Part shown: in pieces, positions 1-21,582 of the stretch
How the letters are laid out: the number at the start of each line of letters is the position of its first letter
How positions within the stretch are numbered: position 1 is the first letter of the stretch
DNA from: Macrostomum lignano
Taxonomy: Eukaryota
DNA: 32,544 bases
Reading direction: 5' to 3'
Assembly (NCBI GenBank): GCA_002269645.1
Contig: NIVC01002465.1
Coordinates: 1-32,544, forward strand
Made by a program: the position numbers and the translations under genes
Notes under the pieces: generated by a model
What the model was told of the DNA's origin: nothing
What the model saw: only the letters and a program-made list of their open reading frames with translations
Databases searched by the model: none

Positions 1-469
1 AGTCTTACTGATATATGATTGGTCCTGCTTACCAAGGCAAACAAATTGATAGGTGATATATAACATAGGTGACATAGGGTAAAAAGAGGATACTTTGCTT
101 TTTAGGCTCATTAGTAATTTGGCTACTATGAAAATTGAAAAAAAATCAATATACATATTTAGATAGTCATGGCAAATCAATTTATAAGAATACATTTGTT
201 TGCAATTGTCTTTTTGTTGCATTTTTTTTAATTTTAGGCCTATAAAAAATTAGATAGTTTAATATATATATGATAAGTTTAAACTCTAAAAATAGACCTT
301 GTTATTTTCCAAAAAATGCAAATCACTTTATTCAAGTAAAATTGTTACAAAGATGTTTGCTATGAATTTATTTTTATGCAAGAAATAAAAGGACAATAAA
401 ATAAAGCCTTCACAAAGACAATAGGCATTCTCCTTAAATAGAAAACATTAAGACCAAAAGCACCTTTTC

Positions 470-575
470 CGAATAGGAAGTATCCTAAAGATAGCAAGTA
501 TCTCCCAATAGCAAGCATCCCATAATAGCAAATATCTTCTCCTAGATAGCAAGCATTCCACAGATAGCAAGGAGT
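470..575. repeat. Degenerate short tandem repeat (ATAGCAAG(T/C)ATC core, ~6 copies) inside the hypermutated domain
   Basis: Recurring atagcaagtatc / atagcaagcatc / atagcaaatatc / atagcaagcatt at ~15-22 bp spacing. Confidence 0.6.
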
Positions 576-1296
576 CTCTATTAAAGATCTCTAATATAAG
601 TATCCCTACTATTCTTCTAAAAAATTCTAGGGGCTATTCTACAATTTGGGGGAAATTCTTCTAAAGAGTTATAGGGGCAATTCAAGATTAACACAGAACT
701 TTTTGAAATCATTAGCCACAATGCTTAGTCTTTTAGTCATTCCAATGGACTCTGTGGTTTTGCTTTCAAGGGCAGGCAAAATTGCTCTACTATGGTACTA
801 TTCTGGTAGTTCACTGAGCACCTAGGGTAGGTAGGCAGACAGATAGATTAGAATAGACAGATGGACATGGCAGCTTACTCATTTATAATATCCATTAGAC
901 TTATTGTTCAAAGTGGACAAGACAACATTGAAGCATATGACTATTAGGCCTATAGATTGTTCTTACTCATTTGTCAGATAGGTAATGTCCAAAAAGTCAG
1001 AGCCCAGACACAAGATTAGCTCTGCATAATCATTTGGGGACAAGATGGTGAACTCTGGTCTAAATGAATACTTGGCCTTGGGTTTTGATTATACAATTAG
1101 GAAACCTAAAGAAAATCAAATAGTTGAGCTTTGCCCCAATGTTTATTTCTCATATTATTATATTATTAGAGCCGAGGTGCTATTGCAAGTTATATTTTTC
1201 TAATATCTTAGACAAAAAAACATCTTAGAAACTAGAGGATGTTCTTTTTGGCCATGGTTAAATAGACTAAATTGGCTAGGGTACTCAAACCAAATG

Positions 1297-1325
1297 TACA
1301 AGTGTTGTTTGAAAAGTCTACAATC
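1297..1325. mobile_element. Candidate mariner terminal inverted repeat (TA + mutated CGAGGGTCGTTCGAAAAGT-like end)
   Basis: TAcaagtgttgtttgaaaagtc lies ~40-70 bp beyond the transposase stop and resembles a mariner TIR after CpG decay. I could not find the partner TIR at the other end. Confidence 0.4.
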
Positions 1326-1365
1326 AAACATGTCTAACAGATTAATGGATTAAACAAATGTAATG

Positions 1366-2358
1366 TTACTCTTCCTGCTTCTCAACATGGGCAGGCACTT
1401 TTGAGACTTATGCACTTATGTCACCTCTTAGCCAACTTCTTTATACTGGCAGCATAGAAATTAGCAGGTAACCCCTTGACCATGGCTGATGCCAGGGTCT
1501 GTAGAAAGCATTACTAGCAATCTCAGGTATGTTTTTTATCTTTTTATCTTTTATCTTCTTTTATGTGGCAACATCTGGAAGCCCAGTTCCAAAATAGCCA
1601 CGATTGTAGCAGACATTGTCATGCTGAAGCAAGATGCCACAACTTAGCTTGCCATATCATTGGGCCTTGATGGCTTCATGCAACTTCTGCAAGACTTAGA
1701 TATATTATTCACTATTGATTTTGGCACCATAGGGATGCTATTTGATAAGCAGAATGCCCTTCTTGTCCTAGAAGATAGTGGCCATTTGCTTCTAAGCTAA
1801 AGGTGCAGTTAGGGTCTTGATAGGTGTGGGCTCATGGCTGGCCTTCTTCTACACATTGCTCTGCATTTTGGACCCTGGCTCACTATAATAGAACCAAGAT
1901 TCATCCCTAGTCACAATCTAGCCCAAAAATTTGGGATCACTACAATATGGACTAGAGAAGCTACTGACACACCTAGACCTGCTCTTGCTATTGCTAGTCA
2001 GTCAGAAGTTTTGGGACCCAATAAGCAAAGACATGTTATATACCAAGTGCAACTGTCAAGATTAAGTGAATAGCCATTGATGAGATGCCAGTACTAGTTG
2101 ACAACTCTTGCACTATGGCTTGACTCAACATCTAGAGCATAATACACAAGCTCATATTGACCATGGTGGCAGGCTAGCTGCTCTGCAAAAGGCCATAAAC
2201 CATCTCCTAGCCATCTTCAAAGCACTGCACCCATTTGTTAACTGTGATTTTTGATTGTTCACTTTTACCATATGTTGCTTGTACCTCATAAATAATTTCT
2301 GCTTGCCATTTCCCTTGCTTGCACAAAAACCAAATGACACTCTGCTTTGTTTCTTCAT
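1366..2358 (-). pseudogene. Mariner (Tc1/mariner DDD-type) transposase pseudogene, hypermutated
   Basis: Minus-strand translation through stops and a few frameshifts gives, in canonical order: VIWFLCKQG..YG..TVNKWVQCFEDG*E..QSS*P (HTH1 and RSGRP); IVQELSTSTGISSMAIHLIL (HTH2); WVPKLL linker (2020-2003); FLG*IVTRDESWFYYSEPGSKMQSNV* (first catalytic D, 1905-1903); KQMATIF*DKKGILLI; KINSE*Y; LHEAIKAQ*YGKLSCGILLQHDNV (second D, 1620-1618); AILELGFQMLPH; FYAASIKKLAKR*HKCI..VEKQEE* (stop 1368-1366). The YSPDLAPxD segment is deleted. Confidence 0.93.
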
Positions 2359-2699
2359 TATTCAGAATAGTGAAAAAATATTTGTGACAAAACTAAGTTG
2401 CACTGGATGGGTGAAATTTTGAGGTTGGGCATGTATGCTTCAGCTAAGCAAGCTGAGTGTGCATGCTCCTAGGGAGCTTAGTTTTGTACTCATTGATGTC
2501 TAGTTGAACTCCAACAACTTTGTTGAGTAGTTCAACATATGTGTATTGGGCCAGGTTGTGTTAATGAGCCAAGGTGTGGATTTTGACAATATATAGTAAA
2601 GACAATGTCCTTGAGGCAACATAGGGAGATTGACAATAAATAGATATACAATGCTATTTTATAATACACATAGATTATAATACAATGCTATTTTTATTG

Positions 2700-2945
2700 A
2701 GTAGCCAAATCTCATGATAATAGAGGTTGACCTCCAAAGCAATGGATATATTGCCAATAATAGTTCAAATGACATTGTTCTTATCTACCTGCAGACATTG
2801 CCAATTCAAGTTGCAGATAAGAGTCATCCATATAAGTGCAGCATACTTGAGGTAGGGACATAAATATAGCTTTCTGCTTGAAATCAAAGATGTGTCTATA
2901 TGTCTACTTTAAAGGCTATGTATATATTTTAGATTTGCTCCAATA
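2700..2945 (-). mobile_element. Non-LTR retrotransposon (LINE) ORF2 post-RT fragment, hypermutated
   Basis: Minus frame reads ANLKYIHSL*SR..LYLCPYLKYAALIW..CLQVDKNNVI*TIIG. This matches the common LINE motif LY..RPxLEYAxxIW..LQxxQNxxxRxIxG with R>C (CGT>TGT), E>K (cGAG>cAAG) and R>* (CGA>TGA). Confidence 0.6.
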
Positions 2946-5295
2946 GCCCCAATTTTAACAAACATACAGACAGACAATTTTAACAGACAGACCAGGTGGT
3001 CTAACATCATGCTCAGTATAAGCAGGGAGGGTCAACACTCCAGTCTTGCTACTTACCAATCCTGAGGCATGTTGCACACATAGACTGAAAGTTAGTAACT
3101 AGGGTCATGGTGAAGGCACAGGCCTGGGTAATAGAATGCCGACTCCAGACCCCAAAGAACTTGCACATTTATGTGGGTATTACTGAACTTGAGGATCATT
3201 GCTATCATTGCTCAGATATCTTACTCACTTTCAAGCCATAGGCTTAGATGTCTACTATGACTGTTCTAGTTTATTTATGTTAGTTATGTTAGCTATACCC
3301 TGGTATAGATGCAAGGATGAAAAAATAACAACTCTAAGGTGACAGACAGACAGGGAGAGAGTGGAGTGCAAATCAAATGCATTGCCTTAGCCAGAATGCC
3401 ATGGCAGAGCCAATCAGCATGTAAAAAAGGGTAGAGAATTGATGCAAGAGAGCACACAAGGGAGGTGGAGGGCTTACATGCAAGCAATTGTAATTTTAAT
3501 TTCCTATTAATATGTTTAATGTTTACTTGATAGTTGTTATTTGCACTACCTGTGCAATTGCTGTCTAACACAGCTGATTTGGCCAGTGTAAACTGTGGTA
3601 GGCCAAATGTAAGTGGCAAAATAGACAACTTTCTAAACAATATTTTATGAGTAGCTAAACCTCATCCTTTGCTTTTGGATAAGTTACAAAACTAAGTTGT
3701 ATTTTCATCAAAACCTAGTAGCATAACCAGTGTTACAAGTTCAGAGGTTATGCATATATTTTAGTATTTTTTTCTGATAGGCTCATGATGTTAAATGTAT
3801 ATTGTTTATTTTCAAATTATATCATACCAAGCACCAGGTACATGTGTGCAGCAGATCATTTTTAGATTATAATGATGTACTATTTCGTTGTACTTTATTC
3901 CATGCTTGCTGTTATGGTAAGTTAGTCAACATGCAGATTTTTGATATTTCACTTTAAAAGATATGTAGTGATATGGGGTTTAATGTACTTTGCTCTTAGT
4001 TATACACTTTACTTATAGTCGTTCAAAAGGTATGATACAAAAAGACAATTTTTCCTCCTAAATGAAAAAAACTGTGCGAATCAGTATGTTCGTGACTAAT
4101 TTCGGACTGATACCCGGTTATTTTTGCACAGATATAAGGGAACAGTTCTGCACAGTACAGGTGTGTCTTTGGCAAGCCAGAGACAGATGAAAGAAGCGAG
4201 TTAGAGAAAAAAGGCCTGAAGGATGACGGCCCTAGCAGTTGGTCATTTTTGGGATATATTAGATGCTTAGAGACAGGGGATGTGAAGTTATCCTCAATCC
4301 AAGCAGTGGTAAGACAGTGGTGGAGTGTTTGGTGCATAGCGGGAGAGAAGGGAACGGTCAAACTGGGCTTGACATCAGAGAGGAAAAAAATAAAACGAAT
4401 GTGGAATGGCGGCCGCCTCTCGTTCCTTCCTAGCCTAAATCAAGAAGGTCTAAATCCAAAACCTGGATTGACAAATCTTCCCTCCAAATCGCCCATAAAA
4501 AGTTCGTTTTTTACTTTAAAATAAAACGAGGTTTTCATAATTCCGGTTAACCAACAGTAGCAATCTGAATCTAAATCTATCTGAATATGAGCAAGAAGTG
4601 CAATAACTCCAGGTAGTTTTAGATCTCCGTGGCCAGTCCCCTGGCCTTTAAATCTGGCTTCATAGTCATGCTTTAATTTTTAGCATCGCTTCTATATATA
4701 TGTACGCGTGCATACTTTTGCTTTTAGCTAAAAATAGCTTTTTTAAAGCCGACCAATTCGGAAACTGCACAGATAGCTGGGTTGGGGAAGGGGGGGAGCC
4801 AAGCCTAGTGGATAGCTATAAAGCAGCGAGTGGGGTCGGTTGTCAAGCGTAGATTAGCAGCTAAATAATAAAAAGCTGCAATGCAACGCTTTCTTAGGAT
4901 CTAATTTGTAGTTATTCCTAGTCCTAACAATTCACTGTCAATCTGTAACTTTCAGTCGTCTATCTCTGCCTGACTGCTTGCTGTTAAGAATATCAATTTT
5001 GAATAAGTCCGCTCGTTTCCGAAGACTGATGGCAACTAGACTTGTTAGTGTGCACTGCGCATTGAATCGGTAGGCATCACGTTTAATACTAAGCCGATGT
5101 CTTATCCAACTGGCGTTCTACTTTGCACCGTGTGTTTAGTTTTAATAAACAATCCAAAGATAAAGATAGAAATTAAATCAACAGCCTTCGTACGCTGAGC
5201 TATTCTCTGACGGAAGTTGCACTGCTGGGTGAAGAGATTCATCGTCCAACAGAGACAACTGTTTAGACTGCCTATTGAAATAGATATATTTAGTA

Positions 5296-6473
5296 ATGCA
5301 GCGAAGCCTTAAACCGCCGCAGGGTCATCAGGCCCAGAAACAGCAACAATACAATCAGTTTGGCATTGTATATGTGAAGCCATCAACTCGCGAGCATCGC
5401 AGCTCAAGCGCCACTGCCATACCCAGCGGTGCCGGTGGCAAGCATCGTTCCCACTCGGCTATACCACAGCCTCCACAGCAGCCGCATCATCAAGATCTTT
5501 CTTCTGCAACATCAGCAGTAGCAACAGCAGGTACTTTGCCATTTTCTCCTCGATACGGTCTGCGTTCTCGGCAGCAGCAGCAGCAGCAGCGTTGCCATAG
5601 CAACACAGGTAGCAGAAATACCAGCCCGGCGCCGCCTTTGGCCCCGTCCAGACTGACATCCGGTCGTCACGCTATGCCTACCGGTCACTCAACAGCATCT
5701 TCCGGCACTTCATCGTCTGGCATACCAACTAGCAGCGGCAAGTCAGCCGCTTCGTCGGGAATTCCTCAGCCCCAGGGCAGGCGAGGCTCAGCAGCCGCTG
5801 TGGTTGCAGCAACGCCTTCGCCTGGCGCCTCTGCGCACAGCTCGCTGCCTCAGCCGCAGCGGCATCAACGAGCTCGATCTGAGCAGCCTCCTGCGCAACC
5901 GAAGCAGCCAACTGTTCAGTCTACTCAGCTTCCTAAACCGACTAAATCTGTCGCAAACAGTAGCGGCATTCCAGCGCCATCTGCATCGCCGGCCGCGAAA
6001 TCCCGTACAGCGTCAAAGAAACCGCCGACAACTCCGCAGTCTTCTTCTTCGACTAATTCTCAGGCGGCATCCTCGTCAGCGTCCACTGGACGTAGATTGC
6101 TGTCCAGGCCAACAATCGGGCAGACAGCTTCATCCAGATCTGTTACACCGGCATCCCCTGCCTCCGCTACTACTGTTAAGAACTCCAACAATACTAGCAG
6201 TAGTAATAGTTTTCTAACTTGCGATGCTTCCGACGAGGATAACAGCAATTCCTTGCACATCGACTGCAGCGATCTTGATGATGCTTTAAACAATGCCGAC
6301 GAGATGTCGATCAGTTCCAGCGAACTGTCGGACGCTGTTGCTGAGCTGGAACGCTCAGTCTGCGCTGGAGGAGAGGGCCGGGCCACTCCAGACTTGTATG
6401 GCCTCACTTTGCGTAAAGCATCGGCAGATTATGGAGCCATTCGTCATCCAGTCGGCTTCAGCAACTCCTTCAG
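5296..6473 (+). CDS. nav: Neuron navigator/UNC-53/Sickie-like protein, N-terminal Ser/Pro/Gln-rich region (5' part of first coding exon, up to the frame break)
   Basis: Long low-complexity ORF directly upstream of, and overlapping, the frame that holds conserved NAV coiled-coil sequence. No CH domain is visible. The right boundary is approximate. Confidence 0.75.
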
Positions 6474-7567
6474 GAGGGCTCAGCTGGCGGCGGCAGCGGT
6501 GGAGAGTACTACTTCTCCGATACAGAGTCTGTACAGCGTCAGCAGCAGCACCAGCTGCTACAGCAGCACCAGAGACGCAAAACCGGCCTGGCTGCTGGCA
6601 CCAGTGGCTACTGCACCATTCGGTCTGCAGCTGGTCAAGCCCCCGCCTCTCTGCCAATGTCTGCCGCTGTTCCTCCAACACCTAGTCAGAGCCTTCGACT
6701 GCCGTACGCCACCATGCGGTCAAGCTGTTCAACTGGGAGCTTCTACCCGGGTAGTGGCGGCGGCGGAGGCATCGGAGGCTCCACGCTGTCAATCTACTCG
6801 GCCGTGTCTTCGTCAGCCACTACGGCTAATGAGGAGCGGCAAGCGATGGAGATTGCAAAGCTTCGAGCTGAGCTTGAGCAGGCCCAGCAGAGAATCGCTA
6901 GTCTGGCTGGTCAGCTCTGCGCCAACACAGACGCTGCCGAGGCTTTTGAACAGTCTCTGTCGGATGTGACCACCAAGCTGAGAGATCTGGCTAGCAGTGC
7001 TGAACGCAAGGACACTGAGCTGTCCCGTCTCCGGGCCGCTGTTGGCGCGCTGAAACGCGAGGAAGCGCCAATGCAGCTTATGATGCAGAAGGAGTCGCAG
7101 CAGCAAGGCTCGCAAAGTAAACGGCATCATGGCTGGTTGAGAAGTTTGCGCAGCTCAAAAAAGCAGCAACAACAGCAGCAGCAGCAGTCACAAGCACAGC
7201 CTCCTCCTCAGCAACAGCAGCCACCTGTTGTTGAGCCTCCCGCACTAACAGAGCTCGAACTCCAGCAAAAGCAGCAATCCGCTGCCGAGCTGCAACAATT
7301 GCGCAGTCTAACAGAAAAAATGCGAGCAGACATTAGCAATTTGAAGGCTGAGAATTGTCGCCTACAGCAGCTACAACAGATGAGATCAGATTTTGTAAGC
7401 GAGGATCACGGATTTGGCGGGTCGGTTACTGACGTTTATGGTGGCTTCGGCGGTGGCGCCAGACGGCTGAGCGTGGACTCGACAGCAGCTTTGTCGGCCA
7501 TCTCTGTCGGCGATGGCTCAATGGATGGTCGCTGCGATGCCGCCCTAGTGGTTAACGGGGCTCAAGG
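6474..7567 (+). CDS. nav: Neuron navigator-like protein, coiled-coil region (3' part of first coding exon; frame open from 6417)
   Basis: STLSIYSAVSSSATTANEERQAMEIAKLRAELEQAQQRIASLAGQLCANTDAAEAFEQSL..AERKDTEL matches the NAV coiled coil (KLRRELE..ANANLVAAFEQSL..AEEKDTEL). The exon ends at a phase-2 donor GG|GTAAGA at 7568. Confidence 0.88.
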
Positions 7568-7881
7568 GTAAGAAAGATTTTAAAGTATAGAGACCGGTAG
7601 TTTCCATGAGGGGAAATACTTCCGCTGACTCCTGAGGACATGCAAGCGCGACAATATTGTACGCAGGCACGCACTCATACACACGCTCATACAAGGTGTA
7701 CAATGGCCCTTTGACTTACTAATCGTTAGACTTGTACACTCTATGTGCCTTAAGGGTTAGAGCCGTTCAGGGAGTCGAACCAGGGGCCGTAATGTGATAG
7801 TCAGACGTGCTTATCACTGACAGTGTTGCACATTATACTGTAAGCTTCACAAAGTAACTACCCACCCTATTTCCCCCGCAG
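7568..7881 (+). other. GT-AG intron of the NAV gene (314 nt)
   Basis: GTAAGA donor and ttcccccgcAG acceptor. Splicing joins GG+A in frame to FDLIDG..LRLTVLAG, continuous with the 7934-9382 ORF. Confidence 0.88.
7757..7835 (-). mobile_element. tRNA-derived SINE head or tRNA pseudogene in the NAV intron
   Basis: Minus strand reads ..gtcagtgataagcacgtctgactatcacattacggcccctGGTTCGACTCCctgaacggc: a B-box/T-loop plus a tRNA-Val-like middle, with an imperfect cloverleaf. Confidence 0.4.
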
Positions 7882-9382
7882 ATTTGACCTAATCGATGGA
7901 TTTCCAAGCTCAGCGGAAAGTCTCCGACTCACTGTGCTGGCTGGGAGCAGCAAGCAGCCAATTGGCTGTCTGCCAGTCTGTCCCAGAACAAAATGGGAAA
8001 CTTTAGACGCCTGTTGCGGTCGGCTGTTTAAAGAATATTTGACTAGAGTTGATCCTAGCCAGGGTCTCGGCTTGGGATCGGACTGCGTTGTCGCTTACGA
8101 AATCCTTGGGAGCAATGGCGGCAGCAGCGGCATGGGTCTCAGGCGGCGTGGCGCTTCATCTCACTCTTGCCCGCCGCCTCTGGTAGCTTGCATGTCGGCC
8201 GCCTCTGCCGCCTCCTCGGATCCCAATATTGATCCTAGAAATCCCCAGCTTCGACTTTATCTACAGCTCCATCTGGCTAGCGAGTTGGAGACCCTGGCAC
8301 TGGAGACTCTGGTGCCTAAGCCTACACTGCAGAGATATATCGGTCTGCTGAAGGAGCACAGGCGTATTGCGCTGTGCGGCCCAGCAGGTGTTGGCAAGTC
8401 CAGACTAGCTGGTAGTTTAGCAGCTCACCTGTCTGGCTCTTCCTCTAGCGTGGCCACTTTCACCGCCGATCGGCGTAGCGAAAGAAATCTTCGAACTTTT
8501 CTCACCAGTTTGAATAACGATTCCAGCGTTGGTGCAGTTGTGCTGGATAATTTGCACCTGGTAGACTCGCTATCTGAGGTCCTGTCAGCCTGTTTGCCGC
8601 CGAAGGAACCGCCGCCGTATTTCATAGTTGGCGTGATGACGCAAGGCGGCAGCGGGCAAGCTGAGCGACTTCACGCGGCCAAGCTTGAGCTGCACAGCGC
8701 TTGCAATTTTCGCTGGGTTCTGTGCTCGGCTCATATGGAACCGGTGCGCGGCTTTCTGGGCCGGTGTCTGCGCCAGCGTCTGGTTGCTGCCGAAGTTGAA
8801 GCTGGGTCCAGACTGCCCGAGATGTCGCTGATAGTTGACTGGCTGCAGGACGCCTGGTTGAAGTTAAATCGCCTGTTGGAGACACACGCTGGCGCTGAGG
8901 CGTCGCTGGGCCCCGGCCAGTTCGCCGCCTGCCCCATGGACTCGTGGCGCGGCGCGGAGCAGTGGTTCCTGCGGCTGTGGAATCACTGCTTAGTTCCCTA
9001 CGTTATCGAAGCTTGCCGTGAAGGCCTGCGTCTGCGCGGCGCCAGAGCTCCGTGGGAAGATCCGGCGGCCAAGTTGAAGATTGACTGGCCCTGGGGTGCC
9101 AGCGGGGACGCCGAGGAGTTGATCAGCATCCGTCCGGAGGATGTGGGTTACGAAGCTAGTAGACCTCCAGCCGCAGGGGTTTCCGCACCAGCCGTTGTCA
9201 CCGGAGCTGCTGATGACATCCCAGCCGAAGTTGTCAATAAAGATTCTACTGCAGCCAACGACGAGGTGATTACAGCATCGTCTGATGCCAACACCACAGA
9301 TGACCGACTGATGGCTATGCTCATGCGGCTACAGGAGGTTGCTAATTGTGGTTTGGCTAGTGACCTGACAGACTGTGTCTGA
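7882..9382 (+). CDS. nav: Neuron navigator-like protein, last exon with AAA+ ATPase domain
   Basis: TKWETLDACCGRLFKEYLTRVDP; Walker A GPAGVGKS; Walker B VVLDNLH; NFRWVLCSAHMEPVRGFLGRCLR; GPGQFAACPM; WFLRLWNHCLVPY; C-terminal LMAMLMRLQEVAN. All are NAV/UNC-53 hallmarks. Confidence 0.95.
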
Positions 9383-9469: not shown

Positions 9470-10035
9470 ATCCACGATAATCTTCCCTTAAATCCATAAG
9501 AATATCCCTTAAATCTATCAGAATCTTGCTTAAATCCACGAGAATCTTCCTTTAAATCCATGAGAATCTCTCTTAACTCCACAAGAATCTCCCTTCAATC
9601 CACGAGAGTCTCCCTTGAATCCACGAGAATCTCCCTTCAATCCACGATAATCTCCCTTCAACCCACTAGAATCTCCCTTAAATCTATCAGAATCTCGCTT
9701 CAATCCACGAGAATCTCCCTTCAATCCGCTAGGATCTCCCTTCAATCCACGAGAATCTCGCCTAAATCCACGAGAATCTCCCTTCAATCCACGAGAATCT
9801 CGCCTAAATCCACGAGAATCTCGCCTAAATCCACGAGAATCTCCCTTCAATCTACGAGAATCTCCCTTCAATCCACGAGAGTCTCCCTTCAATCCACGAG
9901 AATCTCCCTTCAATCCACGAGAATCTCCTTTAAATCCACGAGAATCTCCTTTAAATCCATGAGAATCTCCCTTCAATCCACGAGAATCTCCCTTCAATTC
10001 ACGAGAATCTCCTTTAAATCCACGAGAATCTTCTA
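9470..10035. repeat. 21-bp minisatellite (AATCCACGAGAATCTCCCTTC), ~26 copies, just 3' of the NAV stop
   Basis: Direct tandem periodicity with degenerate edges; it produces the spurious ORFs 9530-9997 and 9560-10036. Confidence 0.95.
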
Positions 10036-11349
10036 AAATTTTACGGGAAGCTCTCTAAACCGTACAAGAATATTCGAAAAGTCTGAGAAGCCTTCTCGAA
10101 TTTATACAATCGTCTTTGAGCTGTCTGTTATATTCAGAAGCATGGCAGTACTTGTCAACTAGTTTTCATCTTGAGCAATCTTTTCAAAACATGGCTTACT
10201 TTGAAGAGTTTATATTGTTTATTGTTTATTACGATAGATTTGGCAGAAATCTGACGTATTGCAATCTTCATGTATATGCGTTGCTAATAAAATTAAAAGC
10301 AATACATTTTCGCATTAATTAGATCACTGTATTATTTAATGTATTTATAATGTACAATATTTGCAAAAAAAAGCCTGCATTATATCAAGTATTTTTTAGC
10401 GTAATCAAATCAAAACTTTACCTAAAATTGATACTTTCAATAATTTGTGCAGTTTTTATCAATTATATTATATAGTGTCTTCTGCCCAGTCAGACGTGTT
10501 GGTTGGTTAAGAAAGAAAGAAAAACAGTTTGATACAGTTTGTTTAAATGCGATCAAGTCTTCAGCTGTTCGCCTTTCAACCGCTTGCTTTTATCTCCGTA
10601 TTTTACCATTTTTTATTTGCTCATCATCTCTCATTACTTCCATCCAGCTTAGCTGCATAGCATTGGCTTCCACAAAGGTTCTTTTCTACTAATGTATAAT
10701 CAAAAAATTATTTGAGCAATAAATCCGAATTCGATTATTTTTATCAGTTATAAATGCTTGCGCTTGCTGCAAATAGTTTTTATTGTGTTTTAAAATCCTT
10801 CGTGCCGCCGGAGTCTCTTAGTACAGACTAATCTCTTGTGAAGTTTTTTTACCTTGTTGCTTTTTTGTAAATCGAATTCGCTTAGCCATTTTAGTCACCT
10901 TAGTATGAAAAAACCGTTTATTTTGTCATTTTTTGCAACCGATGTCTAGTGTAAATAATACAGAAAAGTCTCGGTTGTTGAACTTTTCTCAAAGTACAAT
11001 TTCACTAGCAATGCTACGTGCTTTTTTGTTTTTTGTGTCTGTGAATGAAACTATTTATATTGTTTTTTTAGCTTGGTAACTATTATTTACTTGGCATTGA
11101 TATTTAGAATTCTTGGCATTGAGAAAATATTTATTGGCTTTATTATCGAATATAGACTAAGCAAAAGTTCTTTATTAGTAATTAAATAATTATTCACGAA
11201 TATATTTCGTCAGAAGTAGAACTTTTTGTTTCAGTATCCACACACACCCAATGGACACTCAGAAATGGCTTTCACAAACCTATACTACGAATGTACATTC
11301 ACTCTTAGCCAACCCCTAACCTTTATTGTATACTCGCTCTTCACAGACA

Positions 11350-12130
11350 TTAACCCCCAGTGTACGCTCCTATTCATCAAACTCTTACCCCCAATGTACA
11401 CTCGCTCTTCACCAACATCTTACCCCCAATGTACACTCGCTATTCGTCAACCTCTTACCCCCAATGTACACTCGCTCTTCACCAACATCTTACCCCCAAT
11501 GTACACTCGCTATTCGTCAACCTCTTACCCCCAATGTACACTCGCTCTTCGCCAACCTCTTACCCCCAATGTACACTCGCTCTTCACCAACATCTTACCC
11601 CCAATGTACACTCGCTCTTCGCCAACCTCTTACCCCCAATGTACACTCGCTCTTCACCAACATCTTACCCCCAATGTACACTCGCTCTTCGTCAACCTCT
11701 TACCCCCAATGTACACTCGCTCTTCACCAACATCTTACCCCCAATGTACACTCGCTCTTCACCAACCTCTTACCCCCAATGTACACTCGCTCTTCACCAA
11801 CCTCTTACCCCCAATGTACACTCGCTCTTCACCAACCTCTTACCCCCAATGTACACTCGCTCTTCACCAACATCTTACCCCCAATGTACACTCGCTATTC
11901 GTCAACCTCTTACCCCCAATGTACACTCGCTCTTCACCAACCTCTTACCCCCAATGAACACTCGCTCTTCACCAACCTCTTACCCCCAATGTACACTCGC
12001 TCTTCACCAACCTCTTACCCCCAATGTACACTCGCTCTTCACCAACCTCTTACCCCCAATGTACACTCGCTCTTCGCCAACCTCTTACCCCAATGTACAC
12101 TCGCTCTTCGCCAACCTCTTACCCCAAAGC
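11350..12130. repeat. 35-bp minisatellite (CTTACCCCCAATGTACACTCGCTCTTCACCAACAT), ~21 copies
   Basis: CTCGCT recurs at 11401, 11436 and onward with a 35-bp period. ORFs in all three + frames are repeat artefacts. Confidence 0.97.
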
Positions 12131-13304
12131 TACACTCATTCTTAAGTTATTTAAACCTTAGGGCTTATCATTTCGCAATAGTTAACAGCCAGTAAATAAG
12201 CAAGGTATACATTTCACAAACTTTTCACCTAGTATACCATTACAATGTACGTACAGATTTATCTGTTTTAGTAAAGTATCATATTTTATACTTAACTTGT
12301 GTGAAATTTCTGTCGATAAAATTAATAATCTTATCCTATACATGATTAATTTGTCATTAATTTCGCCACCCAGTCCACAATCAGGTTGTTTCAAATTTAG
12401 TCGAATTATTAATGCAAACTAGTTTTTCGCGTTTATCGTGTTATTGTGTACTTGAGCTGAAATAGAAGCCTTTGCTTTGCATTACATAATAATATTGACT
12501 TTGTCAGTGATGTTAGAGAATTCCCATTCGTTGTGGCAGTAGTACACTCAGCCTGTGTGCACCCTGGCGCACTTTAAGCGACATTGTCACACAACCGGCG
12601 AGAGGCATTTAATGGTAGCCAATAGTGTGACTGCACTTGGAATCGAGCCTGGGCCGCTGAAACATCACTAAGGCTGCCCCCCCCTTTAGGCAGTCTGTGG
12701 GAGTGCAGCTTGGAAGTTCAACCTGTCCGTTTGGTTGGCTATATTGTTTATGGCCAATTCCAGTTCTGTGGCAGTGGCTGCTTGCTGCAGCTAATGCAGA
12801 TTCTCCTAATTGTCAAATTCACTGATAAAAGCAATTTATAAACTTTCGGACATTTCTCCTGAGCGCCTATTGTTTGTTACAATGATTTCACTGTTCCCTA
12901 AATAACTGTACCAATGCTTTATTAAACAAGCTTTAAAAGCTTTCTTTTATCACAATTTTCTAACCCAATTTTTGTGAGAAGAATTTTTTTCGCATTACCA
13001 AATATTTGATGATATTTGTTTATTAAAGTAAATTGATCAGCTTTAATGTGCAACTGCTTTTTTGCCATATCTGAGTTCCATTATGGTTTTTTCCGCATTT
13101 TTTTGAGTTTTTTTTAGAATATCAGGCATTGAGAAGTTATTAACTAGCCATTTAGAAAATTTGTTTCCCAGGGATCTTAAGCCTTCTAGGGATTGCCTGT
13201 ACAATTAATTAGAAATTGTAAGCCTTTTTGTAGTTGCACTTGTTGACAAATAGCTTTTCTTTTGACGCTGTAGAATTCAGTCTGTGGTTGTTGGAACTGA
13301 CAAG

Positions 13305-13680
13305 GGGCGGAGCGTTATATTAAGGGGGCGGATGGTTAAAGGAAGGGGGTGGATGGTTTAAATCGAGGGACAGATTGTTATAGGGAGGGAAGGATTGTTA
13401 TAGCGTGTGGCGGATGTTTAAATAGAGGGGCGGACAGTTTAATAGAGGGGCGGATGGTTTAATAGAGGGGGCGGATGGTAAATAGAGGGGGCGGGTGGTT
13501 AAATAGAGGGGCGGGTGGTTAAACAGAGTGGGCGGATGGTTAAATAGAGAGGGCGGATAGTTAAATAGAGGAGCGGATGATTATAGGGAGGGGGCGGATG
13601 GTTAAACACAGGGGCGGATGGTTAAACAGAGTGGGCAGATGGTTAAATAGAGCGCGAATGGTCTAAGTGAGGGGCGGATA
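13305..13680. repeat. G-rich ~21-bp minisatellite (GAGGGGCGGATGGTTAAATA) with repeated GC-boxes
   Basis: About 17 degenerate copies containing GGGGCGG or GGGCGG. Confidence 0.85.
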
Positions 13681-14246
13681 TTTAACAGAATGAGACTGGG
13701 AATGGTGTACGGCGCAAGGCCGTTAATGAAATCGAAGCAGATGGATGGCTCTGTGTGGCTCTGTGAGTTCAATTGGATCCAATTGTAAGATTTTCTATAG
13801 GCTCTCTTTACTTTAAGCGGTTATCTTCACAGGTATTAAGAACAAAAGCACTCAGCTAGTCGCCTTTGTGTTGTCATTAGATTTATATTGTCTATAAAAT
13901 AGTCTAAACTGGCTTTGCCTATTCATTTTTTTAATGGCAAAAGCGTATGAGGGGTTAATTTTGCGGCTATCCTCTGCTACTGCAAGAAACCGGGGACGGA
14001 CGGCTTTGGAGTGGAGAACTCTGTAGGGGATAATGGCGAGGGTAGTCTGGGCTGGATGGGGTGTTGAGAGGCTGAGAAGGGAGTCGCCTCTTCTCTCCTC
14101 CCGTATTTGCATTCCTCCCCTCTTTTTTCTTCCTAATCTGCAGCTTTCTGCGTACAGTCAGTCAGAGTCTGAGAGAGATCTGCTGTAGCGCCCACTTCTA
14201 TCTGTCTTTCCGCGCTCCTGCTGCCCCTTTTTGGTCGGGCTTAATT

Positions 14247-14679: not shown

Positions 14680-15282
14680 TTAGTTCGGCGCCATGATTGA
14701 CCCTAGTTCGGCGCCAAGATTGACACTAGTTTGACGCCATGATTGACACTAGTTTGACGCCATGATTGACACTAGTTTGACGCCATGATTGACACTAGTT
14801 TGACGCCATGATTGACACTAGTTTGACGCCATGATTGACACTAGTTTGACGCCATGATTGACACTAGGTTGAGGCCATGATTGACACTAGGTTTGAGCCA
14901 TGATTGACCGTAGTTGCTTGACACTAAATCGGCGCCCAGATTGACGCTAAATCGGCGCCATAGTTGATACTAAATCGGCGCCATAGTTGACCCTAAATCA
15001 GCGCCAAGATTAATACAAAATCCGCGCCATGGTTGTCAAAATCGGCGCCAAAATTAGCACTAAATCGGCGCCACAGTTGACACTAAATCAGCACCCAGAT
15101 TGACACTAAATCGGCGCCATAGTTGACACTAAATCAGCGCCCAGATTGATACTAAATCGGCGCCATAATTGACACTAAACCGGCGTCATGGTTGACACTA
15201 AATCAGCGCCCAGATTGACACTAAATCGGCGCCATAGTTGACACTAAATCAGCGCCAAGATTGACACTAAATCGGCGTCATA
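14680..15282. repeat. 23-bp minisatellite with two sub-variants (GATTGACACTAGTTTGACGCCAT, then GTTGACACTAAATCGGCGCCATA)
   Basis: About 26 tandem units; the consensus switches near 14920. Confidence 0.93.
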
Positions 15283-16009: not shown

Positions 16010-16335
16010 CTGTCATTGCGGATCTTTTAATAGTAAATCTAGACTGCAAGTTCATGGACACCTGAACAAAACTGAATTGACTCGAACTAAGACTGCCGTT
16101 ACTAACAGATCTCTAAATAGTAAAATCTGGACTGCAAGTTCATGGACAACTAAACAACTGAATTGATCTGAAATAAGATCGTCGACATTATTAACGGATC
16201 TCTAAATAGTAAAATCTGGACTGCCAGTTCATGGACAACTAAACAGGAGTGAATTGACGTGAACTATGACTGCCGTTACTAACGGATCTCTTAATTGTAA
16301 AATCTGGACTGCATGTTCATGGACAACTAAACAGA
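16010..16335. repeat. ~88-89-bp tandem repeat, ~4 copies
   Basis: CATGGACA recurs at ~16053, 16141, 16230 and 16318 within AAATCTGGACTGCAAGTTCATGGACAACTAAAC units. Confidence 0.85.
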
Positions 16336-16854
16336 CCGTGAAATATAGATTTTAGGGAGCTAGACATTTATTAGCAAAAACATAATTTCAAACTTCTTAG
16401 GAACAATCAAGCATGCCTAATATGGAAATGCCAGTGTTTTTTCTGCTTAAATTTCTTATCGGTGGCTGCTGGCTAGATTTTTTATTGTTCGATTTCTTGT
16501 TGCCAAGCAATTTAGATCGTCAAAAAAAGATATTTACGAAATGGTTAGCCAAGCTTTACGAGCGCACTTGCAGCTATTTTTAGCAGTAAAAAATTTCAAT
16601 GTTTTTGGCAGAAGCTTCTTGGTTGAAACCGTTTTCGATTGATTAGGCTTGATAGTTTTATTACTGTGCTCAGCTTTCAGATTTGAAATGGCCTGGGAGG
16701 AAATCTTAATCCGATTTAATCTGGCCGGGCCGGGCCGCCTTTTTCTTTTGAGCTTCCCTTTTTAGGCTTGCCTTTTTAGCTGAGGTTTTTTTACTGAGTT
16801 TTCCCCGTTTTGTTATTTCGAATTCATTCTCTATTTTTATTTCTTTGTCTCTCC

Positions 16855-17395
16855 CCGACTCTTACTCTTCTCTCTCTGAATCTCACTCTCCCGTCTCTAA
16901 CTCACTCTCCTCTCTCTGACTCTCACTCTCCCGTCTTTAACTCACTCTCCTCTCTCTGACTCTCACTCTCCCGTCTTTAACTCACTCTCCTCTCTCTGAC
17001 TCTCACTCTCCCGTCTTTAACTCACTCTCCTCTCTCTGGCTCTCACTCTCCCGTCTTTAACTCACTCTCCTCTCTCTGACTCTCATTCTCCCGTCTTTAA
17101 CTCACTCTCCTCTCTCTGACTCTCATTCTCCTCTCTCTGACTCTCACTCTCCTCTCTCTGACTCTCAACTCCTCTCTATGGCTCTCACTCTTATCTGCAA
17201 TTCTTACTCTTCTCTCGATGAATCTCACTCTCCTCTCTCTGACTCTCACTCTCCTCTCTATGGCTCTCACTCTCCTCTCTCTGACTCTCAACTCTCCTCT
17301 CTATGGCTCTCACTCTTTTATCTACAATTCTTACTCTTCTCTCGATTAATCTCACTCTCCTCTCTCCGACTCTCACTCTCCTCTCTGACTTGCCT
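16855..17395. repeat. Pyrimidine-rich 19-bp minisatellite (CTCACTCTCCTCTCTCTGA), partly a 38-bp dimer
   Basis: CTCACTCTCCCGTCTTTAA and CTCACTCTCCTCTCTCTGA alternate at 16880-17110, followed by monomeric and degenerate copies. Confidence 0.9.
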
Positions 17396-17825: not shown

Positions 17826-18503
17826 ATGGCTGACACAGCTAAAGCCGCTAACAACAACTCAAGCTCCAAGCCGACTCAAGCCAATAATAATGGTGATGTG
17901 AACCAGAGCAGCACAGACCCCAGCGCCAAGTCGCAGCAGGCTCAGTCCCAGCGTCAGGGAACGCGGGTGTTTAAAAAGAGTTCTCCAAATGGCAAAATCA
18001 CCGCCTACCTCGGCAAGAGAGACTTTGTGGACCATCTGACTCACGTGGACCCCATTGACGGCGTGGTCCTGGTCGACCCCGACTACATGAAGGACCGCAA
18101 AGTGTACGCCCACGTGCTGGCTGCCTTCCGCTACGGCCGCGAAGATCTGGACGTTCTTGGTCTGACATTTCGCAAGGACTTGTACATCGCCTGCATGCAA
18201 GTTTATCCGCCAATTAAGGACAATGCTAAGCCGTTGACTCGACTACAGGAGCGCCTCATCAAGAAGCTGGGCGATAATGCGCATCCGTTCTTCTTTGAGC
18301 TGCCTCCGCAGCAGAGTCCAGCTTCTGTCACCCTGCAGCCGGGGCCCAATGACAGCGGCAAACCTTGCGGAGTTGACTACGAGCTCAAGACCTACGTAGC
18401 TGAGACTGCCGACGGGAAGTCGCATAAACGTAGCACCGTCAGGCTGGCTATTAGGAAACTCACCTATGCACCCGAGCAGCCGGGCCCGCAGCCCAGCGCT
18501 GAG
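17826..18503 (+). CDS. arrb: Beta-arrestin (non-visual arrestin/Kurtz-like), coding exon 1 (N-domain)
   Basis: [113 protein letters not shown], ending at a GAG|GTGATT donor (phase 0). Confidence 0.97.
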
Positions 18504-19681
18504 GTGATTCGCTTGTTTGGGCTTCATCCATTCGGGGGGTGGCGAAAGGTTCAATAATGAAGTGTCATGGAGACTAACGGATGCATCAGTGGTGGTAGCA
18601 ATGGCATCAATGTTAACTTCGGTTATCAAAAGATCCTGAAGGTTTATGGAGGGTAACTGTTGACATCAAAAGATCCTGAAGCTTCAGGAAAGGTAGAGAC
18701 GACATCAAAGGATTCTGAGCTTCGGGGAGATTAGGGATACTGCGACATCAAAGGATCCTGAAGCTTCAGGGATGGTAGGGCAGTACGACATCAAAGGATC
18801 CTGAAACTTCAGGGAGGGTAGGGACGACATCAAAAGATCCTGAAGCTTCAGGGGAGGTAGGAACGACATCAAAAGATCATTAAGCTTCAGGGGAGGTAGG
18901 AACGACATCAAAAGATCATTAAGCTTCAGTGGAGGTAGGAACGACATCAAAAGATCATGAAGCTTCAGAGGAGGTAGGAACGACATCAAAAGATCATTAA
19001 GCTTCAGGGAAGGTAGGGACGACATCAAAAGATCATTAGCTTCATAGAAGGTAGGGACGACATCAAAAGATCCTAAAGCTTCAGGGAAGGTAGGAACGAC
19101 ATCAAAAGATCATGAAGCTTCAGAGGAGGTAGGAACGACATCAAAAGATCATTAAGCTTCAGGGAAGGTAGGGACGACATCAAAAGATCATTAGCTTCAT
19201 AGAAGGTAGGGACGACATCAAAAGATCCTAAAGCTTCAGGGAAGGTAGGAACGACATCAAAAGATCATGAAGCTTCAGAGGAGGTAGGAACGACATCAAA
19301 AGATCATTAAGCTTCAGGGAAGGTAGGGACGACATCAAAAGATCATTAGCTTCATAGAAGGTAGGGACGACATCAAAAGATCCTAAAGCTTCAGGGAAGG
19401 TAGGAACGACATCAAAAGATCCTGAAGCTTCAGAGGAGGTAGGAACGACATCAAAAGATTATGAAGCTTCAGGGAAGGTAGAAACGACATCAAAAGCTGA
19501 TGAAGCTTCAGGGAGAGTAGCGGCGATATCCAAGGATCCTGAAACTTTAGAGAGTGTGGGGTGATATCAAAGGATCTCAAAGTTTCAGGGAGGGTAGCGG
19601 TGAGATCAAAGGATCCAGAAGATACATGGAGGGTAGGAGACATCCTGACGGCTCATAAAGTGTCCCTTCCCTAACCCGCAG
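18504..19681 (+). other. Arrestin intron 1 (1178 nt)
   Basis: GT..ctaacccgcAG; splicing restores [12 protein letters not shown], as in the beta-arrestin PTAETTRQFLMS motif. Confidence 0.93.
18625..19620. repeat. 39-bp minisatellite (GACATCAAAAGATCCTGAAGCTTCAGGGAAGGTAGGAAC) with a 155-bp four-unit higher-order repeat
   Basis: About 25 units. An identical 4-unit block starts at 19021, 19176 and 19331. The core CCTGAAGCTTCAGG is a perfect palindrome. Confidence 0.95.
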
Positions 19682-20110
19682 ACCACAAAGGAGTTCATCA
19701 TGAGCGCTGGCTGTCTCAGACTGGAAGCCAGTCTTGACAAGGAGAAATATTACCACGGCGAATCGATCGCTATCAACGTCCTGGTTGACAACAACACCAG
19801 CAAAACTGTGAAGAAAGTTCGAATCTCCGTTCGTCAAATTGCCGATATTTGCCTATTCAGTCCGAATAGTTACAAGTGCGGAGTGGCCGAACTGGAATCT
19901 GAAGAAGGCTTCCCTATTGGGCCTTCGCAGACTGGCTGGTGCAAGGTGTACCACGTGTGCCCCCTGCTGGCTAACAATCGGGACAAGCGTGGCCTGGCAT
20001 TGGACGGTCAGCTGAAACACGAGGACACCAACTTGGCTAGCAGTACCATACTGAAGGATGCCAGCCAGTCTAAGGAGAATTTGGGCATTGTGGTCAACTA
20101 TAGAGTCAAG
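19682..20110 (+). CDS. arrb: Beta-arrestin, coding exon 2 (C-domain)
   Basis: [98 protein letters not shown]; 429 nt; AAG|GTTGGT donor. Confidence 0.97.
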
Positions 20111-21252: not shown

Positions 21253-21582
21253 GTCCGCCTAGTGCTGGGTTTCGGAAGCTCTGACGTGTGCGTGGAGCTG
21301 CCCTTCGTGCTGACACACCCGAAGCCCTGTGAGGAGGACCTCTCCGAGGCCGGCGACGCCCCAGCCGCCGCCTCCGCTGGCTCGACATCAAAGGCCGCCG
21401 CTCCAGAACCTGCCGCCGCCGCCGCGGCCGCAGCCGACTCTGACATCCTGGACACCGACCTGATTCACTTGGACGCTGGCAGCGATGGGGCCCGGAGTCT
21501 GCACCTGCACCCGGACGACGATCTGATCTTCGAGGACTTCGCCAGACTGCGGCTTCAGGGCCACGGCGAGGAGGACGCTTGA
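21253..21582 (+). CDS. arrb: Beta-arrestin, coding exon 3 (C-tail); full protein about 478 aa
   Basis: SSDVCVELPFVLTHPKP; clathrin-box-like DTDLIHLD; AP2-binding DDDLIFEDFARLRLQG; TGA stop. Confidence 0.97.
   Translation, partial: VRLVLGFGSSDVCVELPFVLTHPKPCEEDLSEAGDAPAAASAGSTSKAAAPEPAAAAAAAADSDILDTDLIHLDAGSDGARSLHLHPDDDLIFEDFARLRLQGHGEEDA

What the first reader, a model, noticed from the sequence alone, without database searches (positions are those of the whole stretch)
1..4075. Multi-element hypermutated domain with a sharp CpG boundary ~1.2 kb upstream of the NAV ATG
Seen: about 5 CpGs in the first 4 kb, CTAG unusually frequent, and TAG:CAG about 37:10 in the first kb. CpGs then appear every few tens of bases from ~4075 onward. 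The depleted domain spans unrelated elements (mariner, LINE, a degenerate tandem repeat and unidentified DNA). Inference: the mark or mutator acts on a whole chromatin domain rather than one TE family, and stops at a boundary protecting the gene promoter.
Basis: partly seen in the sequence, partly recalled or inferred. Interest (0 to 1): 0.8.

Follow-up and report, generated by a model that had tools for sequence, protein, structure and literature searches.

The report
Dead transposon block stripped of CpGs
The first 4 kb of the window is an old, dead transposon-containing block that has lost essentially every CpG through the kind of C-to-T decay caused by long-term DNA methylation, next to genes and introns that show no such decay. 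This is a real and clean pattern, but of a known kind.

Summary
Positions 1-4075 hold 6 CpGs where about 131-147 are expected (o/e 0.05). From 4077 on, CpG o/e is 0.6-1.0, and the step falls within 3985-4076.

Window 1297-2598 (minus strand) is a decayed mariner. An intact relative from public metagenomes (68 CpGs, o/e 0.7-0.8) served as a proxy for the ancestor. None of its 56 aligned CpGs survives: 23 became TG, 15 CA, 10 TA and 8 other. At non-CpG sites C->T is about 18% and A->G about 3%. This is the footprint of methylcytosine deamination, not fungal RIP.

CpG removal was persistent rather than one early burst. A weaker second signal is depletion of CAG/CTG with an excess of TAG.

The minisatellites, introns and exons in the other 28 kb show no extra CpG mutability. 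The unmethylated state is therefore the default, and the block is the exception.

No LINE was found. Nothing supports a boundary that "protects the promoter"; the edge most likely marks the end of the methylated repeat block.

The source is an unidentified, spiralian-like animal. Transposon-restricted methylation is already known in a few animal lineages.

The parts
1..4075 (.). CpG-depleted block, cut off by the left edge of the window, so its true length is at least 4.07 kb. GC is 0.36, it holds 6 CpGs, and CpG o/e is 0.05.
   Evidence: 6 CpGs against 131 expected from composition and 147 expected from the neighbouring unmasked sequence (P = 2e-54). GpC o/e is 1.43, CpA 1.38 and TpG 1.22.
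1297..2598 (-). Dead mariner (Tc1/mariner) copy. It carries at least 19 in-frame stops (14 TAG, 3 TAA, 2 TGA), at least two frameshifts, and deletions in the C-terminal part including the PPYSPDLAPSDY stretch (part of that gap now holds an A/T-rich simple repeat). Its terminal repeats are decayed.
   Evidence: Pfam Transposase_1 match with E = 2.6e-7. 63% amino-acid identity over 99% of the pseudo-protein to the intact transposase P0121. 76% nucleotide identity to the intact element L001:87-1402. Stop codons were counted.
1..1296 (.). Unidentified CpG-free DNA to the left of the mariner (2 CpGs). It contains a degenerate 17-18-bp tandem repeat at 472-573.
   Evidence: No Pfam match in six frames. 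No similarity to the rest of the window.
2599..4075 (.). Unidentified CpG-free DNA to the right of the mariner (3 CpGs). It ends in a short A-rich run at 4060-4071.
   Evidence: No Pfam match. No target-site duplication was found for a retroposon ending at about 4072.
3985..4076 (.). Interval containing the step in CpG density (best change point 4019). GC also jumps here, from 0.29 to 0.43.
   Evidence: Likelihood change-point analysis and the 200-bp profile.
4077..5295 (.). Undepleted DNA between the block and the first NAV reading frame. CpG o/e is 0.57-1.0, no different from the rest of the window.
5296..9382 (+). Large coding exons of the neuron navigator (NAV) gene: reading frames at 5296-6969, 6657-7571 and 7934-9382. 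CpG o/e is 0.66-0.95.
   Evidence: (Pfam AAA_lid_NAV1, E = 2.5e-33, and the NAV1-like ubiquitin-like domain).

Best explanation
Positions 1-4075 are the end of an old, transcriptionally dead, repeat-derived block. It consists of a mariner copy inserted into other, unidentified DNA.

The block has probably been densely CpG-methylated in the germline for a long time, in a genome where genes, introns and simple tandem repeats are not methylated. Spontaneous deamination of 5-methylcytosine converted every ancestral CpG to TpG or CpA. Later C->T changes at CpA then took about a fifth of those on to TpA. Newly arising CpGs kept being removed, so the block now sits at a mutational equilibrium of only a few CpGs.

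The abrupt edge at about 4019-4076 is where the methylated, repeat-derived sequence ends.

What is shown: the substitution spectrum, the complete loss of ancestral CpGs, the persistence of removal, the absence of CpG hypermutability in the neighbouring minisatellites, and the step itself.

What is inferred: that the cause is 5mC, that it acts in the germline, that targeting is to repeats (by small RNAs or heterochromatin), and that the edge coincides with the end of an element.
For: - An intact relative of the mariner exists as three 100%-identical public contigs (L001-L003). It has 47-nt terminal repeats, a TA target duplication, 68 CpGs and CpG o/e 0.70-0.79.
- Against that relative, 0 of 56 aligned CpGs survive in the window copy. 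The outcomes are TG 23, CA 15, TA 10 and other 8.
- At codon positions 1 and 2, each base of a CpG shows a transition in 49% of cases. The figure is 17.7% for non-CpG C or G and 3.4% for A or T. CpG C->T is therefore at least 10 times non-CpG C->T, which is about the mammalian ratio for methylated DNA (that comparison is from my own knowledge).
- Non-CpG C->T is equal at all three codon positions (16-21%), so it happened after the copy died.
- TpA doubles make up 10 of 48 lost CpGs (21%). This matches the independent CpA->TpA rate of 24%.
- Between 6 and 9 CpG-creating transitions are expected in the mariner and 21-32 in the block, but only 1 and 6 CpGs are present. CA->TG and TG->CA double changes number 6 against 1.6 expected. 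Removal has therefore been continuous.
- From creation and removal rates, about 5-8 CpGs are expected at steady state; 6 are seen.
- GpC is not depleted, and CpA and TpG are in excess.
- In indel-free minisatellites of the same window, CpG positions are no more variable than other C or G positions (13.5% against 9.6%, 4.2% against 4.4%, 0 against 0). Exons have CpG o/e of 0.66-0.95.
- Methylation restricted to transposons, sparing genes and low-complexity repeats, has been described in a few animal lineages (PMC12460157; PMC8857917).
Against: - There are no methylation data, the organism is unidentified, and it is not known whether it has DNMT1 or DNMT3.
- The flanks of the mariner were not shown to be transposons.
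- A residual o/e of 0.05 is lower than in typical methylated vertebrate DNA. Non-CpG C->T relative to A->G (about 5-fold) is at the high end of ordinary spectra.
- The edge (under 100 bp) is sharper than typical methylation shores.
- The intact copy is only a proxy for the ancestor. The 19% change at third-position A/T sites shows that part of the divergence predates the death of the window copy.
- Only one such block lies in the window, so generality is untested.
Confidence: 0.7

Rival explanations
1. A dedicated repeat-triggered cytosine hypermutation process, RIP-like or carried out by a DNA methyltransferase-like deaminase, struck this repeat block in one or a few bursts. Its targets would be CpG first and CAG/CTG second.
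For: - Loss of ancestral CpGs is total, 0 of 56, and o/e is 0.05.
- C->T at CAG is 38% against 17% at other non-CpG sites (p = 8e-4), and it is equal on both strands.
- CAG/CTG is the most depleted non-CpG trinucleotide in both the mariner and the non-mariner parts.
- The edge is very sharp.
Against: - CpA and TpG are in excess, not depleted. The RIP index (CpA+TpG)/(ApC+GpT) is 1.51, where RIP gives below about 1.03.
- The ratio of CpG to non-CpG C->T (about 10 or more) is what plain 5mC deamination gives.
- Missing newly created CpGs argue against a single early burst.
- The copy is old, with indels, frameshifts and about 6% change at selectively constrained A/T positions.
- To my knowledge no such system is known in animals.
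Confidence: 0.1
2. A silencing mark spreads over a chromatin domain irrespective of sequence and is stopped by an insulator or an active-promoter boundary that shields the NAV promoter.
For: - Depletion is uniform over the mariner and at least 2.8 kb of non-mariner DNA.
- The edge lies 1.2 kb upstream of the first NAV reading frame.
- CpG o/e is marginally lower (0.57-0.72) in the first 600 bp beyond the edge.
Against: - Everything else in 28 kb is undepleted, not only the promoter-proximal DNA, so no protection is needed to explain the pattern.
- There is no CpG-island contrast beyond the edge.
- No tRNA gene or known RNA element lies at the edge.
- A spreading mark stopped by chromatin usually gives a gradient over several hundred bp, not a step of under 100 bp.
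- The promoter position is unknown.
Confidence: 0.1
3. The pattern is an artefact. Either the assembly joins DNA of different origin at about 4020-4076, or methylated CpGs were systematically miscalled as TG or CA in an unpolished long-read assembly.
For: - The step is abrupt and coincides with a GC jump from 0.29 to 0.43.
- The junction could not be checked, because no reads and no second assembly of this species were found.
Against: - The intact mariner relative has the same GC (about 0.5) and CpG o/e (0.7-0.8) as the undepleted part of the window.
- The copy carries real decay that miscalling cannot produce: 10 CpG->TpA doubles, 18% non-CpG C->T, indels and frameshifts.
- No repeat is shared between the two sides that could have caused a misjoin.
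Confidence: 0.06

Closest known systems
Transposon-restricted CpG methylation in animals (chaetognath Paraspadella gotoi, early-branching nematodes, ctenophores), with its evolutionary footprint of CpG depletion in transposons
   Same: Repeat-derived DNA carries the mark, while gene bodies and low-complexity tandem repeats do not (PMC12460157). Here the block has CpG o/e 0.05, while exons, introns and minisatellites have o/e of about 0.7-1.0 and show no CpG hypermutability.
   Different: Only the mutational footprint is seen here, not the methylation itself. The organism is unidentified: its arrestin is 77-81% identical to mollusc arrestins, and its NAV is at most 45% identical to anything in the database. 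The depletion is essentially complete and ends in a step of under 100 bp.
CpG decay of methylated repeats in vertebrates and cnidarians (deamination of 5mC to T)
   Same: The products are TpG and CpA, the CpG transition rate is about 10 times the non-CpG C->T rate, and GpC is unaffected. Transposons are targets of methylation in cnidarians and other invertebrates (PMC8857917).
   Different: In vertebrates the whole genome is depleted and CpG islands are the exception. Here the genome default is undepleted and the repeat block is the exception. The residual o/e (0.05) is lower than the roughly 0.1-0.2 of old vertebrate repeats (that figure is from my own knowledge).
Fungal repeat-induced point mutation (RIP) and RIP-like CpG hypermutation
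   Same: C->T and G->A changes riddle a repeated element with stop codons, mainly TAG. A sharp compositional edge and AT enrichment are also present.
   Different: The preferred target here is CpG, not CpA. CpA and TpG are enriched, not depleted (index 1.51). The host is an animal, and removal looks continuous rather than a burst.
Non-CpG (CAG) methylation by de novo DNMT3 enzymes in mammalian pluripotent and germ cells, and plant CHG methylation
   Same: The secondary target context is CAG/CTG. C->T is 38% at CAG on both strands, and CAG/CTG is the most depleted trinucleotide.
   Different: This is a footprint only and a modest effect (2-3 fold). No evidence was obtained that non-CpG methylation exists in this animal.

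Membership tests
Methylation-driven CpG decay (5mC deamination footprint) | CpG is strongly depleted relative to composition and to neighbouring DNA, while GpC is not. | tested here: met
   CpG o/e is 0.05 against 0.77 in the rest of the window. GpC o/e is 1.43.
Methylation-driven CpG decay (5mC deamination footprint) | Lost CpGs have become TpG or CpA through transitions. | tested here: met
   Against the intact relative, the 56 aligned CpGs became TG 23, CA 15, TA 10 and other 8, and none was retained.
Methylation-driven CpG decay (5mC deamination footprint) | The CpG transition rate is about an order of magnitude above non-CpG C->T. | tested here: met
   The accumulated C->T change per cytosine (rate x time, from -ln of the fraction unchanged) is at least 2.0 at CpG and 0.195 at non-CpG C. 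The corresponding value for A->G is 0.034.
Methylation-driven CpG decay (5mC deamination footprint) | The DNA is actually 5mC-methylated in the germline, and the genome encodes DNMT1 or DNMT3. | not testable with these tools
   There are no methylation data and no access to the rest of the genome.
Fungal-type RIP | CpA->TpA dominates, with (CpA+TpG)/(ApC+GpT) below about 1.03 and TpA/ApT above about 0.89. | tested here: not met
   The indices are 1.51 and 0.94. CpA o/e is 1.38 and TpG o/e is 1.22.
Fungal-type RIP | It acts on duplicated sequence within one genome, in a burst. | tested here: inconclusive
   Only one mariner copy lies in the window. Missing new CpGs argue against one early burst. 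Close copies from the same genome could not be retrieved.
Tc1/mariner transposon | Transposase with an N-terminal helix-turn-helix region and a DDE/D catalytic domain. | tested here: met
   Pfam Transposase_1 match. 63% identity over the full length to P0121, which carries HTH_48 and Transposase_1.
Tc1/mariner transposon | Terminal inverted repeats and a TA target-site duplication. | tested here: met
   The intact relative has 47-nt repeats and flanking TA. The 3' repeat of the window copy aligns base for base, with its CpGs turned into TG, TA or CA. Its 5' end aligns poorly.
Tc1/mariner transposon | An intact reading frame, meaning an active copy. | tested here: not met
   At least 19 stops, at least 2 frameshifts, and deletions in the C-terminal part including the PPYSPDLAPSDY stretch.
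   No RVT or Exo_endo_phos match in six frames at E <= 1. There is only a 7-A run at 4066-4071 and no target duplication.
CpG-island or insulator boundary at a promoter | The protected side is CpG-rich relative to the genomic background, or a known boundary element such as a tRNA gene is present. | tested here: not met
   Positions 4077-5295 have o/e 0.57-1.0, like the remaining 27 kb. There is no tRNA gene and no Rfam match. Insulator activity itself cannot be tested here.

The most novel reading that the evidence does not exclude
The animal that this window comes from belongs to a lineage not yet known to restrict cytosine methylation to transposons. Its germline machinery marks not only CpG but also CAG/CTG, which leaves a CWG->TWG mutational footprint alongside total CpG loss. 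That would be a plant-like or DNMT3B-like non-CpG component of genome defence in an invertebrate.
Probability: 0.2. Interest if true: 0.55.

Novelty: new member of a known kind. Interest (0 to 1): 0.33.

Why it matters
If the source animal is not one of the few lineages already known to methylate only transposons, this locus is a clean sequence-only indicator of that regime. A dead mariner has lost all 56 aligned ancestral CpGs, while genes and minisatellites a few tens of bases away are untouched.

The locus offers three practical things:
- a simple genome-wide test: CpG o/e of transposon copies plotted against their neutral divergence;
- a rate estimate: CpG transitions at least 10 times non-CpG C->T and roughly 60 times A->G;
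- a candidate footprint of non-CpG (CAG) methylation that could be checked directly by methylation sequencing.

It does not reveal a new mechanism, and it gives no evidence for a promoter-protecting boundary element.

Tried and rejected
- LINE: six-frame Pfam scans of 1-4200 found only the mariner domain. Rejected.
- RIP: the indices do not fit. Rejected as the main process.
- TAG and CTAG excess as an independent signal: CTAG is fully explained by the TAG/CTA excess. The mariner's CTAGs come from CTGG, CCAG and CCGG. The TAG excess in the first kb is partly due to the ATAGCAAG tandem repeat.
- Other CpG-free stretches (20.1-21.2 kb and 24.4-26.0 kb): these are trivial, because the repeat units lack CpG.
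- Element ends at the boundary: searches for inverted or direct repeats gave only chance-level matches. No target duplication was found for a retroposon ending at 4072. No tRNA gene or Rfam family was found.
- Similarity of the block to the rest of the window: none. No second mariner is present.
- Population test of burst against gradual decay: the metagenome scan with the intact transposase returned only other mariner families at 50% identity or less, apparently from other hosts.
- Organism identification: arrestin is 77-81% identical to molluscs and other protostomes. NAV is at most 45% identical to anything, the best hit being a partial Macrostomum protein. The sample identifiers of the intact mariner appear in no paper, and its protein cluster has a single member. 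The organism remains unidentified. A chaetognath was considered because of its published transposon-only methylation, but this could not be tested.
- Reading frames without TAA or TGA outside the mariner: nothing convincing.


Full report

Yes. The window has 1096 CpGs. Below position 4100 they lie at 470, 1173, 1601, 3140, 3886 and 4020, and then at 4077, 4091, 4103, 4115 and onwards every few tens of bases. CpG o/e in 500-bp windows is 0.00-0.11 over 1-4000 and 0.64-0.95 immediately afterwards.

For 1-4075 the count is 6 against 131 expected from base composition (o/e 0.05). The unmasked, non-repeat and mostly non-coding DNA in the rest of the window has o/e 0.77. At that DNA's CpG rate, 147 CpGs would be expected in the block, giving a Poisson P of about 2e-54. 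GpC is not depleted (o/e 1.43), and CpA and TpG are in excess (1.38 and 1.22).

The change is a step. CpG counts per 200 bp run 0, 0, 0, 2 and then 6, 6, 5, 8, 7, 8. The likelihood change point is 4019, with a 2-lnL support interval of 3985-4076.

TAG:CAG in the first kb is 36:9. Two other CpG-free stretches (20142-21222 and 24417-25966) are tandem arrays whose units contain no CpG and are irrelevant.

**2. What is in the block?**

Six-frame Pfam scans of 1-4200 give a single hit, the mariner Transposase_1 domain on the minus strand. No reverse transcriptase or endonuclease was found, so the LINE is not supported.

A frameshift-corrected pseudo-protein found P0121, an intact 352-aa mariner transposase, at 63% identity over 99% of its length. 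P0121 is encoded on three public contigs: two JGI metagenomes and one Logan assembly (L001-L003). These contigs carry 100% identical copies of a 1316-bp element with 47-nt terminal inverted repeats and a TA duplication. Their GC is 0.49-0.53 and their CpG o/e is 0.70-0.79.

The window copy aligns to this element over 1297-2598 at 76% nucleotide identity. It has indels, at least two frameshifts, and deletions in the C-terminal part including the PPYSPDLAPSDY stretch. Its reading frames hold 14 TAG, 3 TAA and 2 TGA stops.

The remaining 1296 bp on the left and 1477 bp on the right are unidentified. The left part includes a weak 17-18-bp tandem repeat at 472-573. These flanks have no protein-domain remnant, no similarity to the rest of the window, no convincing terminal repeats, and no target duplication for a retroposon ending at the short A-run at 4060-4071. 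All three parts are equally CpG-free, with 2, 1 and 3 CpGs.

**3. Mutation spectrum**

The intact copy served as a proxy for the ancestor.

- The intact element has 68 CpGs; the window copy has one, and that one is not homologous to any of them.
- Of the 56 aligned CpGs, none is retained. The outcomes are TG 23, CA 15, TA 10 and other 8.
- Non-CpG C->T is 24% at CpA, 16% at CpC and 15% at CpT. A->G is 5.2%.

Codon positions separate change before the copy died from change after it.

- A/T sites differ by 6% at positions 1+2 (3.4% transitions) but by 19% at position 3. Part of the divergence is therefore older divergence between subfamilies under selection.
- Non-CpG C->T is 16-21% at all three positions, which means it happened after the copy died.

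The accumulated change per site (rate x time, taken as -ln of the fraction of sites left unchanged) is then at least 2.0 per cytosine in CpG, 0.195 per non-CpG cytosine and 0.034 for A->G. CpG transitions are therefore at least 10 times non-CpG C->T. That is the ratio known for methylated mammalian DNA (my own knowledge).

The TpA doubles (10 of 48, 21%) match the independent CpA->TpA rate of 24%. They need no special mechanism.

**4. Burst or persistent process?**

From the A->G and T->C rate, 6-9 CpG-creating transitions are expected in the mariner and 21-32 in the whole block. Only 1 and 6 CpGs exist (P = 0.015 to 0.0009, and 1.6e-4 to 3e-8).

No CA or TG site of the intact copy is now CG. 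Six show the double change CA->TG or TG->CA against 1.6 expected. One caveat applies: these six could also be CpGs lost in the intact lineage.

Creation divided by removal predicts a steady state of about 5-8 CpGs, and 6 are seen. CpG removal has therefore been continuous or recent, not a single early burst.

**5. A second, weaker signal**

C->T at CAG is 19 of 50 (10/25 on the sense strand, 9/25 on the antisense strand) against 68 of 409 at other non-CpG sites (Fisher p = 8e-4).

With a first-order Markov expectation, CAG/CTG is the most depleted CpG-free trinucleotide in both parts of the block:

| Region | CAG/CTG o/e |
|---|---|
| Mariner | 0.69 |
| Non-mariner part of the block | 0.83 |
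| Rest of the window | 1.24 |

TAG/CTA and CAA/TTG are among the most enriched trinucleotides.

It also explains the CTAG excess. The mariner's CTAGs derive from CTGG (3), CCAG (3) and CCGG (2), and CTAG is not in excess once the TAG and CTA counts are given.

The signal may reflect some CAG methylation by a de novo methyltransferase, or a context bias of the spontaneous mutation spectrum. It is suggestive, not established.

**6. The surroundings**

The rest of the window carries three genes:

- a neuron navigator gene (Pfam AAA_lid_NAV1 and the NAV1-like ubiquitin-like domain; reading frames within 5296-9382);
- a beta-arrestin gene (17826-21582, in very few exons);
- probably a third gene near 29.5 kb.

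About 28% of the window is minisatellite arrays. Exons have CpG o/e of 0.66-0.95.

In indel-free arrays with a CpG in the unit, transitions at the CpG are no commoner than at other C or G positions (13.5% against 9.6%, 4.2% against 4.4%, 0 against 0). The germline default here is therefore unmethylated, and the repeat block is the exception.

The 1.2 kb between the edge and the NAV reading frame is not special (o/e 0.57-1.0). No tRNA gene or Rfam family lies there.

**7. Explanation and rivals**

*Best explanation (0.7).* Long-term germline CpG methylation targeted to a dead, repeat-derived block. 5mC deamination has driven CpG to mutational equilibrium, and the edge marks the end of the targeted sequence.

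*Rivals.*

- A RIP-like burst (0.1). This is contradicted by the CpA and TpG excess (index 1.51) and by the persistence argument.
- A spreading mark stopped by a promoter boundary (0.1). This is unnecessary, because all other DNA is undepleted, and a step of under 100 bp is unlike a chromatin gradient.
- A misassembly or miscalled methylated CpGs (0.06). This cannot produce the TpA doubles, the 18% non-CpG C->T or the indels, but the junction itself could not be checked.

**8. Comparison with what is known**

Methylation restricted to transposons, sparing gene bodies and low-complexity repeats, is described for the chaetognath Paraspadella gotoi. The same paper names early-branching nematodes and ctenophores as the other animal cases (PMC12460157). 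Transposon targeting in cnidarians and other invertebrates is also documented (PMC8857917). The pattern here is the evolutionary footprint expected of such a regime.

The source organism could not be identified. Its arrestin is 77-81% identical to those of molluscs and other protostomes, and its NAV is at most 45% identical to any database protein. I therefore file the finding as a new member of a known kind.

**9. Verdict**

This is a clean textbook-quality example rather than a new mechanism. Interest is 0.33. The most novel reading not excluded is CpG plus CAG germline methylation of transposons in an unsampled animal lineage, with probability about 0.2.

Noticed in passing
window 9470-31037 (arrays at 9470-10031, 11290-12137, 13304-13685, 14681-15281, 16019-16333, 16849-17386, 18625-19644, 20142-21222, 21878-22591, 24396-25966, 26763-27418, 30082-31037): About 28% of the window is minisatellite arrays with 15-88-bp units that fill introns and intergenic DNA. 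Several keep a CpG in nearly every unit. CpG positions in them are no more variable than other C or G positions, so they appear unmethylated in the germline.
   Followed up: partly
window 20142-21222 and 24417-25966: These two further CpG-free stretches look like the finding but are trivial. They are tandem arrays whose repeat units (GATTGGATGCTTCAGGTGAT and CTCACTCACTTTCAGTGTCACTCT) contain no CpG.
   Followed up: yes
window 5296-9382: "NAV" is a neuron navigator (AAA_lid_NAV1 and the NAV1-like ubiquitin-like domain), not a sodium channel. It is encoded in unusually large exons, and its C-terminal part is at most 45% identical to any database protein. Whether the ATG at 5296 is the true start was not established. 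It could instead follow a splice acceptor, with further exons to the left of the window.
   Followed up: partly
window 17826-18557, 19700-20141, 21262-21582: The beta-arrestin gene seems to be split into only about three coding exons, separated by introns full of minisatellites. It is 77-81% identical to mollusc arrestins. Both genes look intron-poor for a bilaterian, which may hint at the lineage.
   Followed up: partly
L001:87-1402 (also L002, L003): The intact relative of the mariner is 100% identical in three independent public samples: JGI 3300038379, JGI 3300043259 and Logan SRR12687280. This points to a young, probably active family in some eukaryote present in those samples. The host and the nature of the samples are unknown.
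   Followed up: partly
window 1564-2377 compared with L001: A/T-site differences from the intact copy are 19% at third codon positions but 5-8% at first and second positions. The window copy therefore descends from a subfamily that had already diverged under selection before it died.
   Followed up: yes
window 29543-29935: A reading frame containing a GLWRKC motif and hydrophobic stretches resembles, from memory only, a claudin or calcium-channel gamma (stargazin) type membrane protein. It may be part of a third gene.
   Followed up: no
window 4076-4675: CpG o/e just beyond the edge (0.57-0.72) is slightly lower than further on (0.8-1.0). This could be a short shore of partial methylation, but the counts are too small to tell.
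   Followed up: no
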